Origin: Salisapilia sapeloensis CBS 127946
Taxonomy: Eukaryota > Protista > Oomycota
DNA length: 64,000 nucleotides
NCBI GenBank assembly: GCA_023334545.1
Contig: JAADVB010000010.1
Coordinates: forward strand, 89,948-153,947
Direction: 5' to 3'
The translations under genes and the position numbers were made by a program. The stretch's first letter is position 1, and each line of letters opens with the position of its first letter. Under the pieces are notes generated by a model. It made no database searches. It had not been told where the DNA came from and was given only the letters and a program-made list of their open reading frames with translations. Below are positions 8,201 through 64,000 of the stretch, piece after piece.

Positions 8201-11200
8201 TTTTTTCGATCAAATTGAAGGTGTCTCTCAGATAATGGACTTGCCTCGAGTGGTGGTAGAAATTGAATGCTTTGATCATACGCATCAGTAAGACAAGGGA
8301 AGTTTGATTCAGCGTCGCTTTTCCGGATGACGTAGAGTAATTCGATGTATGCTTGCAAGTACAAAGAGAAAATCGACCTGTCCTGAACGAGTTCTCGGTC
8401 GTGTCGAGCATTTGCCGCCTGAAGAACTTCTGCATACGACAGATTGCTCTCTCGAATCCAGCTTTCTACGAAGCTGCTCTCAACCTTACCACAAATGCGC
8501 AACAATTGGCTAAGCGTGTGAATCGTGATGCACTTTAGAGAAACATTTGAAGTCGATAACAATTTCTCCAGCCTCGTCAACCATTTCCGACATTGACTCG
8601 TATCCCAAACTTTCTGATCGTGACAAGCTTCGAGGAAAATGTCAAGCATCCAGACACTGAGTTCAACGGAAGGCTGCTGCATGGCATCGACATCACATAG
8701 ATCCAGCCCTCGCTGTGTCCATACATACGCTTCGTACTCCGTCCCATTCAGCGCCATCTCCAGTTCATTCAAACACATATCCATTCCGCACTCTAGTGCA
8801 GACTTTCCATCATCTTTAATGATACGCTGAAGGACACCAGACAATATGTCATAAGCGCTACTTCTAGTCGAGCAACTAGTCTCTTTATCGATCGCTGAAT
8901 GAACATGGCTTGAGAACTGGTCACCTCGAAACAGTACCGCTTTGCACAGTTGAAACAACTGTACAAAATCTTCTTTCGTATGCCCGCCTTGATCTGAGTA
9001 CAAGGAAAATGAATGCACCAAGGTCTTACGTGCATATAATATGACTGCCATCTTTTCAAATGTCAAAAGTTGTGCAACAAGCGTTTGCATGGACATTTGC
9101 TTCACTTCTTCGTCAAACTCCCGAAGCACTGCATGAAGAGGTAAGCTCGACTGGTCTTTCTTTTGATTTTCAAAGCGTTCTGGAGACCGAGGCTTGACCG
9201 GGCTCGTGTTGCCTGTAATCTTACGTTTCGAGCCTAATTGCGCCTCAGCCACTGTTGATCTCCACTTCGTAAAGAAGGTTGTTAAATCATTCGATCTATA
9301 TCCGCCTTCCTCAAATGGGAAGTACATTTCGCCAAACGTTCTTCTTCCTGTCTCTATGTCGTGAAGTATGCCTACAGTCTGTTTGCTTTCAATCGTCGGT
9401 ATACACTGTTCTGGATACGGTGTCAGTACTTGCATCGTTTTCTCATCCTTAGACTCATCCGTATCATCGTCATCATCATTAAACATGGTGGATGCGTCCA
9501 TTTCGTCTTGACCTCGCTTTTCCAGGGAAAACTGCATTCGAGTGAGATAGTCTAGATTATCTACAATCCATGCAGATGCACTCACAATATCATTTCCTGT
9601 CTGCTTTAAAGCAAGCGTACACCATTCCTCCGGAAATCCCATCATCATAAGCTCCTCTATAAATTCTGCCTGAGTCTCTTCGTCATCCATATCATCTTCG
9701 CTATCATCGGAATTGGACAAGTCATCGTCCTCACCAACGTCATCTGCGTTAGCACTTCCATTTGAATTTCCGTCACTCTCGTTCTTAGGAAGCTCCATAT
9801 CGTAGCTGGATGTATCGATTTGAAGATTTAAAGAAAATGAATGTCGATTGCCAACCTGTTCTACCTTGAAAATTCCTGACGGGTGTAACTTTACGCTAGG
9901 TTCTTCTGTTTTGTTTAATAGACACTTGGCCAACTCGAACGACCCTTCTTCTTGTAAATCGTCTGAAATGGAAAGCAATTGAAGGTGAAGTAGACTCAGT
10001 TTGTGTTCCAATTCCGTCAATGTACAAAACTGATGCACTTGCCCTGTTTCCAATGCAAGTTTCCACACGATGTTCCTGTAGCTTTTCAGCTCGTCTGCAT
10101 TGGGGGCTGTCTTCGAATTGGAAACGGAATGAGCCAACGCTTTCATCCATAAACGTCTTGCCTGGAGATGTGAAATAAACTTGAATGGATCATCTCCACT
10201 TTGATACTCGATGACCTCTTCTACTAAGAAATTTAGACACGACAAACCATCAGTGGCACACTTGGACGGCTGAGTCGCTTTTATCGGCACAGGGTCAAGG
10301 AGTGGATGGATGGGTTCAAGATCATCAATATTGACCCATCTACACCGAGATGCAATGGAGTCTTTGTTGTTACTACCTGACCTATGCATTTGCTGTTCGA
10401 GCGTCCTTAGTTGCTGATCAACGTTCTCACACCATCCGTTTAATTCCAAATTACTGATGTTGCATTCTTCGTGAAGTACTATCGCTCCGATTGTACAGTC
10501 TCTAGATTGGAACCACTTTGGAAGAGGGGAGGGAGGCATGGGTGTGTCTTGGTTAGTATTCTGCACAGCTATCAACGTTGCATACTTGTCAGTGCCTGCA
10601 AGATAAACCGTCGATCCAGGTCGTAAGGTCTCCAATACAGTGTTCGCCACTGAGAGAGCTGCAACTACTTCAGCTCGTTCAACTTGACTCCTTTCAATAG
10701 TTATACCGTTGATACGATAAAAGAGTCGCTCTTGTACATTGCTTCTGTCCGAAAGCGTGTTCTGTAGGACTTGCTTAATGGCTTCACTCCATTTCGATGA
10801 AGATTTATATAGCTGCTGTAGTAAAAGTATAAGTTCCTTCGCTACCAGACTCTTCAAAGCTATCGAGCTCGAATTAGCTCGACTTGTCCATGGTAAGCTT
10901 TCATCTTTCATGTCCTCTTGATCATTATAACTTTTGAGGTAGGAGCTTAGGAAATCGAGACTAGTGCTAGATTTCTCGTCATTAGCATCGACTGCTGTTG
11001 GGTTTAATTCACCACTTAACGAAAACCCAATTATCTGTAGGATGCTTTGAATACAAATGGAGTCTTTACTATAAAAGCAGGCGGGGACATTTGCATAAAA
11101 GCTTTGTCGCATGGCTTTCGATGCATCTCCTGGTGTCTGTAAGGTCAAGAGGGACTGTAGGGCTTTTAGTATGGTCTGTCGTACTGGAAGGGAGTTCACA

Positions 11201-57035: not shown

Positions 57036-58607
57036 CTACGTCTTCGGTGTAGTCACATCCACAGCAATGTCACTATAACTACCAGACATGCTTCGATGCA
57101 TCATGTTGTGCAGTCTCCGCTCCGGATCATTCGGTGACAAGTCTCCTTGACTGCTTCCAAATTGCGATCCACCACGCTGACTCCAGATCTCGTTGACCCA
57201 TCGGAGAAGTCTCTGTCCCACGCCAGTCTCCTTTTCATCATCGACGGCACTGTTAATGCGTCCTCTCCTCGTCTGACGAGACCGAAGACCGTCCTCTGTT
57301 AATGCAACGTCGCCAAAGAGGACCCATTGCTCGAGTGCAGCTGGTCCTGTGATCCACCCTTCATTCGTTCTCTGGAGCGGCACAGGTACAGCACCTCCTC
57401 TCGTTGCCAACAAGTGGTCAATGTGCTGCTTACTTACCATGTAGATGGATACACTGACGCATCCAAGTGCAAAGAAGACGAGTGCGTACGGAAAGGAGAG
57501 CGAAGAAGTGGAGGACGTTGCCATCAAGATGAATACTTGGCCAGTTCCACCCGTCACAAGTGCCAGGAGGTACAAGACACTGGCGACGAGCTGTGGATTA
57601 GATAGTCGATAGACACCAGCAAACTCACGCTGGAGAATGAGTGCCAGACAAAGTGCCATGATGACTTCCAACGCCATCAGAGGAGAGCAAACGGTTGTCC
57701 ATGCAAGTGGGTACGAGTGGTCAAGTCGGTAAGCTTCAATCTGATACGACACAAGAGTTGAAAAGACAAAGACGAGTAGCCAGCATAGGCCAGGGAGGAA
57801 CGAGTCGGATCGACAGAGAAGATAGCGGACGAGGAAGGCTGCTTGAATGATAATAAGAGGAACGAAACCGACGTAGAGGCTGCCCATGCCCTCTATGCCT
57901 TCACTCAATCGAACACAGAACGCGATCTCACTCCATAAGAGGAGCAACGCAAGCGGCACTGTCACTGCGTAGATGACCAATATTCGCTTCAGGAGCGGCA
58001 AGAGAGGTTCTTGGGATACTAGATTCGCATCCGCAGAGCTTAGGCCGTTTGAAGAAGTCGGGTTCACATTGTTCGAGTATTCGATTTCAGCCCACATGCG
58101 TAGCTGCTTGACGTGTTTGATTGACGTGACATGCGCCAAGGACAGGATTCCATTGCCAATCCAGAACGGAAGGAATACAACCCACCAGGCTAAGTACTGG
58201 ATATGTGCTGAGTCTGAGGTATAATTCTGTGGAAGTAGAAGACCTTCAAAGTTGAGTGAAGTGAGAAAGAGACCAAGAAGGCAGCAAAAGATGTAGACGA
58301 GAACGCCGTAGAGTAACGACGCGAGGGCTTTTTCAGCGTACATGATGGGTCGGAACGGACCCATACCGGAGTACGCATCCGAGTACATTCCACTCTGAGC
58401 CGCCCGAGCGTTTGTCGTCTGTACATGTCGTGGGATGGCCATATACGTCCCATCGGATGAGCTCTGGCCGTCATTCAAGGCACGCAAAAGCGGCGACTCT
58501 TCGCTCATGCTGCTCCGACTGCTCCTACTACTACTCGAAGGACTTGGTGCACCTCTATGCTCGCCATTCCCGTTCATACGTGGTGCCGAAGTGCCATCTC
58601 CTGCCAT
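57036..58607 (-). CDS. TMEM185/Fragile-X-F-like multi-pass membrane protein
   Basis: WWVVFLPFW and WTTVCSPL repeats typical of the Transmemb_Fragile-X-F family, with about 8-9 TM segments. Confidence 0.7.
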   Translation of the reverse strand: MAGDGTSAPRMNGNGEHRGAPSPSSSSRSSRSSMSEESPLLRALNDGQSSSDGTYMAIPRHVQTTNARAAQSGMYSDAYSGMGPFRPIMYAEKALASLLYGVLVYIFCCLLGLFLTSLNFEGLLLPQNYTSDSAHIQYLAWWVVFLPFWIGNGILSLAHVTSIKHVKQLRMWAEIEYSNNVNPTSSNGLSSADANLVSQEPLLPLLKRILVIYAVTVPLALLLLWSEIAFCVRLSEGIEGMGSLYVGFVPLIIIQAAFLVRYLLCRSDSFLPGLCWLLVFVFSTLVSYQIEAYRLDHSYPLAWTTVCSPLMALEVIMALCLALILQREFAGVYRLSNPQLVASVLYLLALVTGGTGQVFILMATSSTSSLSFPYALVFFALGCVSVSIYMVSKQHIDHLLATRGGAVPVPLQRTNEGWITGPAALEQWVLFGDVALTEDGLRSRQTRRGRINSAVDDEKETGVGQRLLRWVNEIWSQRGGSQFGSSQGDLSPNDPERRLHNMMHRSMSGSYSDIAVDVTTPKT

Positions 58608-60661: not shown

Positions 60662-63178
60662 TTTTCCAGAATGCACTTGATAATTGGATATGGAAGCCTT
60701 TATAGTATGGCCCCGCTTGGCTTTTTGTCTAGAACATCAGTATATCAGGGGAAAAGAATCCATTTATACTTATGCTGGTGGCTTTCGTGTTCCAAAACGT
60801 GCATGTGAACTAGACTAGAAGTAGTTCTACTCGCTGCTACCCAGTATTCTGCATGATAGCATGACAAACTCTCTGCAGCGCCGAAAGATAGAAATATTTC
60901 CTGCCACCGAATCTTTCGTTCGGGAAACATACGTGCATAGCTACTTGCGCATGAATTGAAGCATCGCCACTTCTGGTCAACTCGTGCCTGATCTGTCCAT
61001 TTATCGCATACGAAATGTTGGCGTTAGGAATCATGGATCAAAGTCGATCTTGAGACATTGCCTAGCGTACTCGTATTCAATTTACGAACGAGAGGAATTG
61101 GTGAAATGTTCACTAGCGTACACTAACAGGAATCGACACGAAATGAATATAATCTTGACTTGTATCGATTAATATATGTTTTCTTTGAACTTGACCGACG
61201 GTGAAGAATATCAAGAGCGGAACATGGATACCGGTTGAAGAAACGGATAGCCAAATGAAACCCTACGCACTTCAATCCAGACAAACATTCAAAACTGCAC
61301 TTGTTGATTCGCTATAATAACGCCGTGGGATTGGTAACCCCGAGCCTTTTGCTTATAAGATCTGGCATGTATTAAACTCAAACTATTGGCTTAAACGAGC
61401 GTTCCAGTGCAGTCTATGGTCGATGCAAAGATACTTGGTGCGTGGCTTCGATACACACTCATGCGGTGCTCTTTGAACTACCGCACTATAAAAATTGCAA
61501 GCGAGATTTGACGTAGTTCCAAGAAGTCAAAATTCATTGAAGTGATAAATATAAAAGCTGGGCTGAGAAAATATACACTTTGTCGAGGTTACGGGGAAAG
61601 CTACTAAGACTTCCTTCCAAGAGCACGGTAAGTAAAAATTGTGCTTGTGTACAGTTGGGATTGGCCGAAAAATCTTTTCTTTTGATCGTCTTTCATCAGT
61701 TTACAATTTCAATTTGCGTAGTCAGCTTCAACGTATCTTCAATGTACACTTCAACTTGTGTTGATGCACATCATTATCCAGGTACCGACCCCTGTACATT
61801 AGTCGTATTATTGTCTTCTTCAAAGCACAAGCGAGTGCGGCGCCTATCTCTCATTGCGATGCAAAGTGCGTAGGACATGGTACGCTTTGCGGTCTCCTAA
61901 TAGTCGTGGTAGAGACGGAAGGACATAGCTACGTCAAGCGATCCTTTTTTATGGCATGTGTGATAAAAGTGGCTATGTAAAAGCGTCGAAACGCTGTTCG
62001 ACACGACGATTTGATCCTGTGTGAACAATGCGCGCTCCAAATCATAATAATTATGATTTTCACAGGGAAACGCAGCTTCACGAGCTTTCACTCTGATAGA
62101 GCTCCTGTACTGTTTTCAACTAAATGGTACTACCAACCAGCTCTTACCACTATTCTAGAATTAAAGACGCTTATAAGTGTAATTGTCCGTTTATTAGCTG
62201 ATCGTAGACAACATTCATTTTCATCGATCATCTACCATGACTTTTCTTGCGGCTCTTGTAGTGTAACTGAGTCGACCTGCCATCGAGTACATGTACACCT
62301 AAAAACTTTGCAGTTCCTTGCACTCTCTTTCAAAACCTTCTTTTGCAATATAACTCGCCCTTCCCTTCCCTTGTTCTGGTTTAGAAGACAACAAAGTGAA
62401 GATTGAGATTGTAGACCTTATATGTAGCCTCTCGTCCGGTCATCGTGTTTAATTCATTTGAACATTTGACCAGCACAGCATCCAGCTACGGGCATATAAC
62501 TCGGTGTATTTAATCGTGGAGTCAAAATAGCTTCATTGCATCAGGACACAAGTTTAGCATGCTTGTACCTGCACAGACTACTAGCGCGTCCACGATCATG
62601 GATATTCTATTCAATATGATTTAGTAGACCTTTAATCAGTAACCTGTATCCGATGTCCCGAACAGCAACATCATCGCGTTTGTGACTACTTTAGAAGAGC
62701 ACACTTACAGTTATAGCTCGACGCTAAGAAGGTAGAGGGCTACCACTTCTTCTCTAGTCCGACCGTTATGTTAAAAAAATTATAAACTAAGTTCTACTTT
62801 GTATTGACGTACAAGTTCCACTGGTAATCAATACTGTCAGATCTGGTGAGGCACCTAGATGAAAGCATGCAGTTGCAATTCTCTTAATGCCATCGTGTCC
62901 TCTATCTTTCAATAGGAATATACAAGCTCTCTGCAAGTTACTACATCTAAGCAACTGGAGTTTCTACTACATATAAAGTTTATAGGAGTAGACTAACACT
63001 ACCAAGCTAGCGCAGTTAGCTATAGCTTATCTAATTAAAAACAATCCATGCCCAATGCAGACTTGTTGCCTTAAACGCCAGACAAAACCTCTCTTCTCAC
63101 TTAGGCTGCGCACTAATAAAGTGCGTTTTATAAATATTGTATATTTATATAATTTACCAAAACCTAAATATCCATCCT

Positions 63179-63251
63179 GGGCGCTTAGCTCAAATGGTAG
63201 AGCGCCCGCTTCGCATGCGGGAGGTAGGGGGATCGATACCCCCAGTGTCCA
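63179..63251 (+). tRNA. trnA-CGC: tRNA-Ala (anticodon CGC)
   Basis: 73-nt cloverleaf. Acceptor GGGCGCT/AGTGTCC with G3:U70, anticodon arm CCCGC-TTCGCAT-GCGGG, eukaryotic Ala-type T-loop ATCGATA. Confidence 0.95.
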
Positions 63252-63254
63252 AAC

Positions 63255-63259
63255 TTTTT
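63255..63259 (+). terminator. Pol III terminator (T5)
   Basis: TTTTT 3 nt after the discriminator of tRNA-Ala(CGC). Confidence 0.75.
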
Positions 63260-63868
63260 ACGTTTTGCTCCGTTTTGTTTGGTTTGATAGGCGGGAATGT
63301 TTGGAGTACACATCACAGCTATCACTCGTCTGTGATGATCGTCACCACCTTGCACAATTATTAGACTTTTTCAAGTTCGAAAATCTCATTTGAACATTAG
63401 ATTGGGTACACCTCGGGAATTATATTCAATTTTTGCTACGCCTACATGGAGCATCTTCCTCAGCCACAAAGCTACTAGCCGTACGTCAAGCTTGTCTGTC
63501 AGTGATTAACCGTGTACACTGCTCTTGTTTGTGTTTACTTTCAGTTTTTCAACCTATCAAGTCATCTGCGCCCGAAACATCGGACTACCAAAGACCAGCA
63601 ATCAAGATATGAACCTAGAAGGCGATCATGACAGCTTTGCCACCCTCGAGCATGCTCTACATATCATGCGCAAGCCATACCCATATATTTCCGAATAGAA
63701 TTTCATTAACTTTAAAGAGGAGATCTCGTCTTCGCTACACATATAATACCGGAGTTGGATCCAAGTACGTAGCTCTATCTGACCTCAACCCCATCAAAGC
63801 TACTACAAAACGATTTAGCTGCTACTTCTATAATTTTGTATATTAGCTATAACAAAGCCAAATAACAT

Positions 63869-63941
63869 GGGGATGTAGCTCAGATGGTAGAGCGTTCGCT
63901 TAGCATGCGAAAGGTACTGGGATCGATACCCAGCTTCTCCA
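63869..63941 (+). tRNA. trnA-AGC: tRNA-Ala (anticodon AGC)
   Basis: 73-nt cloverleaf. Acceptor GGGGATG/CTTCTCC with G3:U70 and a U6.U67 mismatch, anticodon arm TTCGC-TTAGCAT-GCGAA, discriminator A at 63941. Confidence 0.93.
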
Positions 63942-64000
63942 GGCGTGTGTAGTATAGTGGTTAGTACCCTTCGTTGTGGTCGAAGTATCCTCGGTTCGAA
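63942..64000 (+). tRNA. trnH-GTG: tRNA-His (anticodon GTG), truncated by the window edge, with genomic G at -1 (63942)
   Basis: G1 at 63943 (GCGTGTG), T8A9, D-arm GTAT-AGTGGTTA-GTAC, anticodon arm CTTCG-TTGTGGT-CGAAG, T-arm start CTCGG-TTCGAA. The 3' acceptor strand lies outside the window. Confidence 0.85.

What the first reader, a model, noticed from the sequence alone, without database searches (positions are those of the whole stretch)
63869..64000. Abutting tRNA-Ala(AGC)-tRNA-His(GTG): upstream 3' processing could create the His G-1 identity element without Thg1
Seen: the discriminator A73 of tRNA-Ala (63941) is followed by one G (63942) and then G1 of tRNA-His (63943), with no T-run between them, whereas tRNA-Ala(CGC) at 63179 has a normal T5 terminator. 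Established: eukaryotic cytosolic tRNA-His normally receives G-1 post-transcriptionally from Thg1; tRNase Z cuts right after the discriminator and leaves a 5'-monophosphate on the trailer; the known nuclear dimeric tRNA precursors in yeasts have multi-nucleotide spacers. Inference: the pair is one Pol III transcript, and a single tRNase Z cut would both mature the Ala 3' end and release tRNA-His starting with pG-1. That would be a punctuation-type route to His identity that bypasses Thg1 and RNase P. A G at -1 has roughly a 1-in-4 chance alone; the zero spacer is the stronger signal.
Basis: partly seen in the sequence, partly recalled or inferred. Interest (0 to 1): 0.88.

Follow-up and report, generated by a model that had tools for sequence, protein, structure and literature searches.

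The report
Abutting tRNA-Ala and tRNA-His genes
Two transfer-RNA genes lie head to tail with one G between them, in this oomycete and in related environmental DNA, so a single cut of a joint transcript could give histidine tRNA its extra 5' G without the enzyme that usually adds it.

Summary
tRNA-Ala(AGC) occupies 63869-63941, one G sits at 63942, and tRNA-His(GUG) starts at 63943 and is cut by the window end.

The host is a divergent oomycete. Assembly-graph depth suggests about five dispersed copies of the junction, and every tRNA-His copy appears to follow Ala plus G. First readers of this scan noted the same pair on four other pieces of this genome.

The pair also occurs in unidentified metagenomic relatives. 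Eight loci from six distinct contig sequences were read as DNA, and 33 antisense-ORF clusters span it. The spacer is always one nucleotide and always G, although five of seven His acceptor base pairs covary. In relatives, His has A73 and a T-run directly behind it.

Other tRNA-X/tRNA-His pairs have 4-8-nt spacers that vary in length, with T, C or A at -1.

The best reading is a Pol III dicistron whose spacer is a genome-encoded G-1, released by one cut at the Ala-A73|G-1 bond. tRNase Z is the likelier enzyme, but RNase P could cut the same bond.

Not shown:
- the co-transcript
- the mature 5' end
- the acting enzyme
- whether Thg1 is absent

I found no published description. I rate it a new variant of known kinds.

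The parts
63836..63845 (+). TTGTATATTA, a TATA-like upstream motif at -33 to -24 of tRNA-Ala(AGC). It is the presumed upstream promoter element of the dicistron.
   Evidence: Read directly. The same motif, TTGTATATT, lies at 63137-63146 upstream of tRNA-Ala(CGC). The upstream flanks of other genomic copies carry TTGTATATTAC or TTGTGTATTAC at the same distance (loose ends). Its function is inferred. The corresponding -33 to -24 stretch of tRNA-His lies inside the Ala T-arm and holds no such motif.
63869..63941 (+). tRNA-Ala(AGC), 73 nt, with G3:U70 and discriminator A73 at 63941. It has no terminator of its own.
   Evidence: Rfam 57.6 bits and ARAGORN. Stems covary in relatives. The unitig depth of 323 against 36-42 for single-copy sequence gives about 8-9 genomic copies, of which about 5 are followed by G plus His.
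63942..63942 (+). The single spacer nucleotide G, at position -1 of tRNA-His. It is the proposed genome-encoded G-1 identity nucleotide.
   Evidence: Read. It is invariant in 8 of 8 DNA loci (alignment A3). It is implied by a Pro codon (CCN) at the junction in 33 of 33 antisense-ORF clusters.
63943..64000 (+). tRNA-His(GUG), nucleotides 1-58 of an expected 72. The window ends inside the T-loop.
   Evidence: Rfam 32.5 bits, model positions 1-57, cut at the 3' end. The source-run unitig continues 16 nt beyond 64000. Full-length relatives score 60-65 bits and have A73 and a T-run 1-4 nt downstream.
63179..63259 (+). Stand-alone tRNA-Ala(CGC) at 63179-63251 with trailer AAC and T5 at 63255-63259. 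It serves as an internal control for a normal monocistronic Pol III gene in this genome.

Best explanation
This is a conserved nuclear Pol III dicistron, tRNA-Ala(AGC)-G-tRNA-His(GUG). Transcription is driven from the Ala gene and its upstream TATA-like element. It reads through into His, because Ala has no T-run, and stops at a T-run just behind His. The single spacer G is the genome-encoded G-1 identity nucleotide of tRNA-His. One endonucleolytic cut at the bond between Ala A73 and G-1 yields two products: tRNA-Ala with a 3'-OH ready for CCA addition, and tRNA-His starting with 5'-phosphate G-1. tRNase Z acting on the Ala moiety is the most likely enzyme, because only a 3'-end-defined cut explains why the spacer length never varies. 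RNase P shifted by one position could cut the same bond. The resulting one-nucleotide 'leader' is not removed, just as Thg1-added G-1 is stable in other eukaryotes. Thg1 is then dispensable for cytosolic tRNA-His. Shown here: the gene anatomy, its copy number, its conservation, and selection on both tRNAs and on the G. Inferred: co-transcription, retention of the G, the enzyme, and independence from Thg1.
For: The anatomy is confirmed.

Within the genome, one unbranched unitig spans 63912 to 64016 at depth 185, against 36-42 for single-copy sequence. It is the only contig laid on the His part. So about 5 His copies exist and all follow the Ala 3' end plus G. Flanks diverge within a few nt of the pair, so these are dispersed loci. 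First readers noted the pair on 4 other pieces of the genome.

Across relatives, L069, L083, L084, L085, L086, L087-L090 and L091 all read Ala...CCA-G-GC...His...A73 followed by T4-T8 within 1-4 nt. Rfam places the two tRNAs exactly one position apart in each. All 33 antisense-ORF clusters have 24 His codons, then Pro (CCN), then the Ala part. Seven different His acceptor contexts occur among them.

Selection is evident. 98.4% of cells are paired and 16 pairs changed on both sides, including 5 of 7 His acceptor pairs. G-1, both A73 and Ala G3:U70 never vary.

The contrast is informative. Other short-spacer X-His pairs (iMet, Ala-CGC, Ile, Leu) have spacers of 4-8 nt that vary in length within a pair type, and -1 is T, C or A. 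Stand-alone His genes elsewhere have a variable -1.

There are precedents. RNase Z cleavage of human mt tRNA-His creates the 5' end of the abutting tRNA-Ser(AGY) (PMC12630138). C. elegans lacks Thg1 and keeps an encoded G-1 opposite A73 by an unknown mechanism (PMC4338351). Diatoms and several algae lack any Thg1 or TLP (PMC3561963).
Against: No RNA evidence was obtained. RNA-labelled runs X2, X3 and X5 hold only a stand-alone Ala copy.

The Thg1 status of this organism and of oomycetes was not tested. If Thg1 is present, the G could be redundant.

Nematodes keep an encoded G-1 without any upstream tRNA, so RNase P-type retention is possible with A73. The enzyme therefore cannot be assigned from sequence.

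The His 3' end, N73 and terminator of this particular copy are outside the window.

The relatives are metagenomic and taxonomically unplaced, and they share ancestry, so 33 clusters are not 33 independent events.

The ORF probe keeps only frame-preserving junctions. Pairs with other spacer lengths would appear as half-hits, and only the best 120 hits were listed.
Confidence: 0.55

Rival explanations
1. [quoted passage not shown] The abutment only saves a separate Ala 3' trimming step.
For: Nematode tRNA-His genes stand alone, mostly carry G at -1 and have A73. So a eukaryotic 5' nuclease can leave G-1 opposite A73. RNase P and tRNase Z both leave a 5'-phosphate and a 3'-OH, so the products would be identical. 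Single-subunit PRORP shifts to -2/-1 when -1 pairs with 73 (PMC12630138).
Against: G-1 opposite A73 cannot form the Watson-Crick pair that redirects RNase P. If RNase P alone fixed the His end, the spacer upstream of the G could vary in length, as it does in other X-His pairs. Yet it is exactly 1 nt in every case. Only two unpaired nucleotides separate the two acceptor helices, which makes a poor RNase P leader.
Confidence: 0.2
2. The pair follows the ordinary eukaryotic pathway. It is co-transcribed, RNase P cuts at -1/+1, the 1-nt G trailer on Ala is trimmed, and Thg1 adds G-1 afterwards. The G and the 1-nt spacing are kept for another reason, such as processing efficiency or compactness.
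For: Thg1 is the rule in eukaryotes (PMC9976931). Dimeric tRNA genes exist in yeasts without any link to identity (PMC2566860, listed). From my own recollection, mammalian 3' tRNase is reported to prefer a purine as the first trailer base; I did not check this here.
Against: Stand-alone Ala(AGC) and Ala(CGC) copies in the same genome have A, not G, after the discriminator. So tRNase Z has no general need for G. The base and spacer length stay invariant across lineages whose His acceptor stem has turned over, which is hard to explain by compactness. Other X-His pairs show no G at -1.
Confidence: 0.18
3. tRNA-His is transcribed on its own, with Pol III starting at or just before the G inside the Ala 3' end. 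This gives a leaderless or near-leaderless transcript beginning with pppG-1, as in Nanoarchaeum.
For: tRNA-His has intact A- and B-box regions. Pol III prefers to start at a purine. Leaderless G-1 starts are known in an RNase P-free archaeon (PMC10100707, abstract).
Against: Ala has no terminator, so read-through into His is unavoidable. The -33 to -24 region of His lies in the Ala T-arm and lacks the TTGTATATT-type motif seen upstream of the other tRNA genes here. A start exactly at -1 would be unusually close to the A box.
Confidence: 0.05
4. The pair is an assembly artefact or a decaying pseudogene pair.
For: The window ends inside the His gene, and contigs of this assembly break at tRNA genes (note s1-308081).
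Against: The junction is present in the raw-run unitig at about 5 times single-copy depth. It is also present in independent metagenome assemblies. Both cloverleaves keep 98% pairing with compensatory changes.
Confidence: 0.02

Closest known systems
Human mitochondrial tRNA-His / tRNA-Ser(AGY) junction (tRNA punctuation; indirect 5' maturation by RNase Z)
   Same: Two tRNAs abut so that the cut made by RNase Z at the 3' end of the upstream tRNA is also the mature 5' end of the downstream tRNA (PMC12630138).
   Different: That case is organellar, part of a long polycistron, and the downstream tRNA lacks a D-arm and is a poor RNase P substrate. Here the genes are nuclear Pol III genes and the downstream tRNA is a normal cloverleaf. 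What the cut would create is an identity nucleotide (G-1), not just a 5' end.
C. elegans-type genome-encoded G-1 on nuclear tRNA-His in Thg1-less eukaryotes (Rao and Jackman 2015, PMC4338351; Bigelowiella natans also mentioned there)
   Same: G is encoded at -1 of nuclear tRNA-His genes and the discriminator is A73. G-1 is presumed to be retained rather than added.
   Different: The nematode genes stand alone with ordinary leaders, and their mechanism is unknown. Here the G is the only nucleotide between the discriminator of tRNA-Ala and His +1. Thg1 absence has not been shown for this organism.
Dimeric nuclear tRNA genes of yeasts (S. cerevisiae Arg-Asp, S. pombe Ser-Met) and the Yarrowia tRNA-5S dicistrons (PMC2566860)
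   Same: Two Pol III genes lie in the same orientation, the upstream one has no terminator, and a single terminator follows the downstream one.
   Different: By my recollection the yeast spacers are 7-10 nt and carry no known function; I did not check this here. In this case the spacer is 1 nt, invariant in length and base, and coincides with an identity element.
Bacterial and organellar encoded G-1 retained by RNase P
   Same: G-1 is genome-encoded and retained after endonucleolytic 5' processing.
   Different: The bacterial mechanism needs a G-1:C73 pair. All full-length relatives here have A73.
Plant tRNA-snoRNA dicistrons processed by RNase Z (Kruszka et al. 2003, cited in PMC13578239)
   Same: In a nuclear Pol III transcript, RNase Z cleavage behind a tRNA releases the downstream RNA.
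   Different: The downstream partner there is a snoRNA whose ends are trimmed further. No identity element is created.

Membership tests
Dicistronic (dimeric) nuclear tRNA gene | Two tRNA genes in the same orientation, separated by a short spacer without a T-run terminator | tested here: met
   Ala 63869-63941, G 63942, His from 63943, with no TTTT anywhere in 63869-64000.
Dicistronic (dimeric) nuclear tRNA gene | A terminator only behind the downstream gene | tested here: inconclusive
   This lies outside the window. Six distinct relative sequences have T4-T8 within 1-4 nt of His A73.
Dicistronic (dimeric) nuclear tRNA gene | A junction-spanning precursor transcript | tested here: inconclusive
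   RNA-labelled runs X2, X3 and X5 show no junction contig.
Bacterial/organellar encoded G-1 (RNase P retention) | G at -1 in the gene | tested here: met
   Position 63942 is G. It is invariant in relatives.
Bacterial/organellar encoded G-1 (RNase P retention) | C73 pairing with G-1 to give an 8-bp acceptor stem | tested here: not met
   All full-length relatives have A73. The window's own N73 could not be read.
C. elegans-type nuclear encoded G-1 | Nearly all nuclear tRNA-His genes carry G at -1, with A73 | tested here: met
   A single unbranched junction-plus-His unitig at about 5 times single-copy depth. Pro at the junction in 33 of 33 clusters. A73 in relatives.
C. elegans-type nuclear encoded G-1 | No Thg1 orthologue in the genome | not testable with these tools
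   Only a 64-kb window is held, and no Thg1 query sequence could be obtained from a tool. First-reader notes of this genome mention Thg1 only in connection with this pair. The literature says diatoms and several algae lack Thg1 and TLP (PMC3561963) but says nothing on oomycetes.
C. elegans-type nuclear encoded G-1 | Mature tRNA-His carries the encoded G-1 | not testable with these tools
   This needs 5'-end mapping of the tRNA.
Punctuation-type 5' maturation by tRNase Z (human mt His/Ser(AGY) type) | The bond after the upstream discriminator is exactly the mature 5' end of the downstream tRNA | tested here: met
   This holds if the mature His starts at G-1: A73 at 63941 is followed directly by G-1 at 63942. 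The spacing is identical in all relatives.
Punctuation-type 5' maturation by tRNase Z (human mt His/Ser(AGY) type) | The downstream tRNA is a poor RNase P substrate | tested here: not met
   tRNA-His here is a canonical cloverleaf scoring 60-65 Rfam bits in relatives. Only the very short two-nucleotide linker might hinder RNase P.
Punctuation-type 5' maturation by tRNase Z (human mt His/Ser(AGY) type) | Demonstrated tRNase Z cleavage at the junction | not testable with these tools
   This needs a biochemical assay. An unchecked first-reader note reports a short-form tRNase Z gene elsewhere in this genome (s1-308544).

The most novel reading that the evidence does not exclude
A whole group of eukaryotes obtains the tRNA-His identity nucleotide by nuclear 'tRNA punctuation'. 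The group includes this oomycete and several unidentified lineages with 27-48% GC, possibly the Thg1-less stramenopiles and their allies. Every tRNA-His gene is fused 1 nt behind tRNA-Ala(AGC), and the tRNase Z cut that matures tRNA-Ala releases pG-1-tRNA-His. Neither Thg1 nor RNase P acts on tRNA-His. This would explain how protists without Thg1 or TLP keep G-1. It would also couple His decoding capacity to Ala tRNA gene expression.
Probability: 0.35. Interest if true: 0.88.

Novelty: new variant of a known kind. Interest (0 to 1): 0.77.

Why it matters
G-1 is the main identity element of tRNA-His. Textbooks give two routes to it: bacterial RNase P retention, which needs C73, and eukaryotic addition by Thg1. 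Several protist groups lack Thg1, and in C. elegans an encoded G-1 opposite A73 is retained by an unknown mechanism (PMC4338351, PMC3561963).

A conserved gene architecture in which G-1 is the only nucleotide between an upstream discriminator and His +1 offers a concrete, testable mechanism for that gap. It would extend the RNase Z 'indirect 5' maturation' known from human mitochondria to nuclear Pol III genes.

There is also a practical point for annotation. tRNA scanners and assemblers break or miscall this pair: ARAGORN added the G to Ala in several loci, and contigs end inside the pair.

Tried and rejected
1. I tried to extend the window through a neighbouring gene. The 523-aa ORF at 57036-58607 is not on record.
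2. Its homologues' loci in Globisporangium polare, Lagenidium giganteum and a Logan contig (L001-L003) hold no tRNA genes, so the tRNA cluster is not syntenic.
3. An exact 34-nt scan of metagenome contigs with the His D and anticodon arms found nothing.
4. Read laying gave copy-number and branching information but does not print the 16 nt beyond 64000. The RNA-labelled runs X2, X3 and X5 hold only a stand-alone Ala copy.
5. I could not place the AT-rich pair-bearing contigs taxonomically. Ciliate-code ORF scans gave only junk ORFs. An Atlas search of an L084 retroelement ORF gave only weak animal-type retroelement hits. Cluster look-ups carry no names, and two larger JGI contigs could not be fetched.
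6. I could not test for Thg1.
7. Literature searches for an Ala-His dicistron, for oomycete or stramenopile Thg1, and for tRNase Z-made G-1 found nothing on point.
8. Rejected readings:
   - bacterial-type G-1:C73, because relatives have A73
   - pseudogene or assembly artefact, because of the covariation and the multi-copy depth
   - a tRNA-derived repeat unit larger than the pair, because flanks diverge within a few nt

Full report
**Observation.** Rfam places a complete tRNA at 63869-63941 (57.6 bits). It is Ala with anticodon AGC, a G3:U70 pair and discriminator A at 63941. A second tRNA match begins at 63943 and runs to the window end (32.5 bits, model positions 1-57 of 71, flagged as cut at its 3' end). 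Its anticodon loop TTGTGGT gives GUG, so it is His. Position 63942 is a single G, and no T-run occurs in the stretch. ARAGORN reports only the two Ala genes, because His is truncated, and it adds flanking bases to Ala. tRNA-Ala(CGC) at 63179-63251 is followed by AAC and T5, a normal monocistronic Pol III gene. The His 3' strand, N73 and terminator lie beyond base 64000.

**Organism.** The window carries long, nearly intron-free ORFs at 42-52% GC. A 523-aa ORF finds only oomycete proteins. Identity is 43-47% to Globisporangium, Pythium, Lagenidium, Phytophthora and downy mildews, 40% to Saprolegnia and 37% to Albugo. The host is therefore an oomycete or close ally, distant from every sequenced genus in that collection.

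**Copy number and context in this genome.** I laid Logan contigs of the probable source DNA run on 63100-64000.
- The 660-nt spacer between the two Ala genes has depth 36, which is single copy.
- The 73-nt unitig that is exactly tRNA-Ala(AGC) has depth 323.
- One 105-nt unitig runs without a branch from 63912, inside Ala, through the G and the whole His part to 16 nt beyond 64000, at depth 185.

That last unitig is the only contig laid on the His part, since the depth there is exactly 185.1. Three things follow.
- About five genomic copies of the junction exist.
- No copy of this tRNA-His is preceded by anything other than the Ala 3' end plus G. Otherwise the graph would branch at His +1.
- His continues for a full 72 nt plus 2 nt before the copies diverge.

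Upstream flanks of other copies diverge 1-6 nt before Ala (loose ends), so these are dispersed loci, not a segmental duplicate. About 3-4 further identical Ala(AGC) copies stand alone with the trailer ATCGAATCTTTT. First readers of this scan independently noted the same pair on four other pieces of this genome, which matches the depth estimate. I did not see those sequences.

**Relatives.** An exact scan with the His D and anticodon arms found nothing. A degenerate scan for any T-arm followed within 0-30 nt of spacer by the His D-arm returned 79 metagenome loci. One of them, L069, carries the same pair. It reads Ala(AGC)...CTTCTCCA, G, then a tRNA-His differing from the window's by compensatory changes, with discriminator A and then TCCTTTTG.

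The antisense strand of the pair is an open reading frame, so I used its translation as a probe of the protein collection. Thirty-three clusters of spurious ORFs span the whole pair. Every one has 24 codons of His, then Pro, then the Ala part. That Pro codon is the complement of His G+1, the spacer base and the Ala discriminator. CCN therefore means G at +1 and G at -1, with a spacer of exactly one nucleotide. Seven different His acceptor contexts occur around it.

Fetching DNA confirmed this directly in L083, L084, L085, L086, L087-L090 and L091. L087-L090 are one sequence. Rfam places His and Ala exactly one position apart in each. All His genes have A73 and a T4-T8 run 1-4 nt downstream. 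Contig GC ranges from 27 to 48%. None of these contigs could be placed taxonomically.

**Both tRNAs are under selection, and so is the G.** The test used an alignment of the window and seven relatives (A3).
- The two-cloverleaf structure is paired in 98.4% of cells, against 88% in shuffles and 32-52% when partners are slid.
- Sixteen pairs changed on both sides, including five of the seven His acceptor pairs.
- His variable-loop positions also vary.
- The spacer G, both discriminators, Ala G3:U70 and His G1:C72 never change.
- The MFE fold of a full pair is two independent acceptor-closed domains joined by just two unpaired nucleotides, A73 and G-1.

**Contrast set.** The same degenerate scan recovered other eukaryote-type pairs with tRNA-His downstream:
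- initiator-like Met-His, spacers of 5, 6 or 8 nt
- Ala(CGC)-His, 5-6 nt
- Ile(AAT)-His, 5 nt
- Leu(CAA)-His, 4 nt

Their spacers vary in length within a pair type, and -1 is T, C or A, never G. A His-only antisense probe (A2) found stand-alone tRNA-His genes of other organisms with variable junction codons (Leu, His, Arg, Gln, Pro). Nematode entries were mostly Pro, meaning G at -1, which agrees with the published C. elegans case and validates the read-out. It found no stand-alone gene with the His sequence types of the pair-bearing lineages. This probe has limits: it lists only the best 120 hits and depends on an open antisense frame.

**Mechanism.** Shown: the gene anatomy, the copy number, the conservation and the selection. 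The rest is inferred.
- Ala has no terminator, so Pol III starting at Ala must read into His.
- A TTGTATATT(A/T) motif sits 24-42 nt upstream of both Ala genes and of other genomic copies. The equivalent region of His is the Ala T-arm, which suggests that His depends on the Ala promoter.
- tRNase Z cuts directly after a discriminator and leaves a 3'-OH and a 5'-phosphate (established knowledge). Here that bond is A73|G-1, so one cut would finish the Ala 3' end and produce pG-1-tRNA-His.
- A 1-nt leader should survive RNase P, because Thg1-made G-1 survives it in every other eukaryote.

The strongest sequence argument for a 3'-end-defined cut is that spacer length is invariant here but free in other X-His pairs. 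If RNase P alone set the His end, extra nucleotides between A73 and the G would be tolerated. RNase P cutting one position upstream at the very same bond cannot be excluded, and both enzymes may act. The ordinary pathway, with RNase P at +1 and then Thg1, leaves the invariant G unexplained. Stand-alone Ala genes of this genome have A, not G, after the discriminator.

**Literature.**
- Eukaryotic G-1 is normally added by Thg1 opposite A73 (PMC9976931; PMC6470698).
- Rao and Jackman showed that C. elegans lacks Thg1, that 16 of its 17 tRNA-His genes encode G at -1, and that it keeps G-1 opposite A73 by an unexplained processing step. They note Bigelowiella natans as similar (PMC4338351).
- Diatoms and several algae lack any Thg1 or TLP, for reasons not determined (PMC3561963).
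- In human mitochondria, RNase Z processing of tRNA-His generates the 5' end of the abutting tRNA-Ser(AGY) (PMC12630138).
- I found no paper describing an Ala-His dicistron, a one-nucleotide G spacer, or tRNase Z-made G-1 in nuclear genes. A 2026 review of tRNA gene repertoires mentions neither tRNA-His nor Thg1.
- The library lacks most subscription journals, so prior description cannot be excluded.

**Transcript evidence.** There is none of weight. RNA-labelled runs of the same organism hold a stand-alone Ala locus and a low-depth contig at 63424-63720, but no junction. One run of another organism label, guessed to be RNA, holds all four sampled words of 63912-64000.

**Not done.** Thg1 presence, HisRS type, the RNase P type of this organism, the actual N73 and terminator of this copy, and the taxonomic range of the pair all remain open.

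**Verdict.** The pair is multi-copy, appears to be the only form of tRNA-His in this genome, and is conserved with an invariant one-G spacer across divergent lineages. The interpretation that the G is a genome-encoded G-1 released by a cut at the Ala discriminator is the best-supported reading, at about 0.55 as stated. I put retention of the G by either nuclease at about 0.75. The enzyme and Thg1 independence are untested. It combines known elements (dimeric tRNA genes, encoded G-1 in Thg1-less eukaryotes, RNase Z-made 5' ends) in a way I could not find described.

Noticed in passing
L004:1-9500 (metagenome contig Ga0315318_10001793): This contig holds sixty tRNA genes in 9.5 kb, almost all on one strand, with a eukaryote-type anticodon set. 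It includes Ala(CGC)-TGTGT-His followed by a T-run. It is an extremely dense tRNA array of unknown origin, possibly a picoeukaryote or a giant virus.
   Followed up: partly
L006:1657-1953: In a contig of 25.7% GC, four tRNAs lie in a row: Asp, 3 nt, Met, 1 nt, an odd tRNA with a 6-nt anticodon loop, 1 nt, then His, followed by T9. The base before His +1 is again a single G, directly behind the upstream discriminator (C), and His has A73. This is a second, unrelated instance of a one-G spacer before tRNA-His.
   Followed up: partly
L084:88-10166: This is an Ala-G-His pair in which the 5' 27 nt of Ala are replaced by unrelated sequence. Downstream lies a non-LTR-like retroelement with ORFs of 842 and 1361 aa, the latter carrying RVT_1. 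The element begins right behind another tRNA-Ala(AGC) gene at 9264-9348, which suggests a retroelement that targets tRNA genes.
   Followed up: partly
P0151-P0153, P0155, P0165, P0214-P0217, P0220, P0236; P0058, P0061, P0092, P0105: These deposited 'hypothetical proteins' are antisense translations of tRNA genes. The nematode entries (Necator, Dictyocaulus, Ascaris, Strongyloides, Steinernema) overlap tRNA-His. The entries from Medicago, Arachis, Mucuna and Laminaria overlap tRNA-Ala. Most nematode entries have Pro at the junction codon, meaning G at -1 of tRNA-His, which fits the C. elegans report.
   Followed up: partly
window 63424-63720: Low-depth contigs (3.6-5.2) in two RNA-labelled runs of the same organism cover this ORF-poor stretch between the tRNA genes. 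It may be an unannotated transcript.
   Followed up: no
window 63137-63146 and 63836-63845: A shared TTGTATATT(A/T) motif lies upstream of both tRNA-Ala genes, at -42 to -33 and -33 to -24. Upstream flanks of other genomic tRNA-Ala(AGC) copies carry TTGTATATTAC or TTGTGTATTAC at the same distance. It is probably a TATA-like Pol III upstream element.
   Followed up: partly
L014, L015, L025, L046, L047, L060, L068, L073, L081: An initiator-like tRNA-Met(CAT) is followed after 5-8 nt by tRNA-His, with a T-run only behind His, in several marine and freshwater metagenome contigs. In the scan for a tRNA lying just upstream of the His D-arm, tRNA-His was the downstream gene in many hits, with several different upstream tRNA types.
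   Followed up: partly
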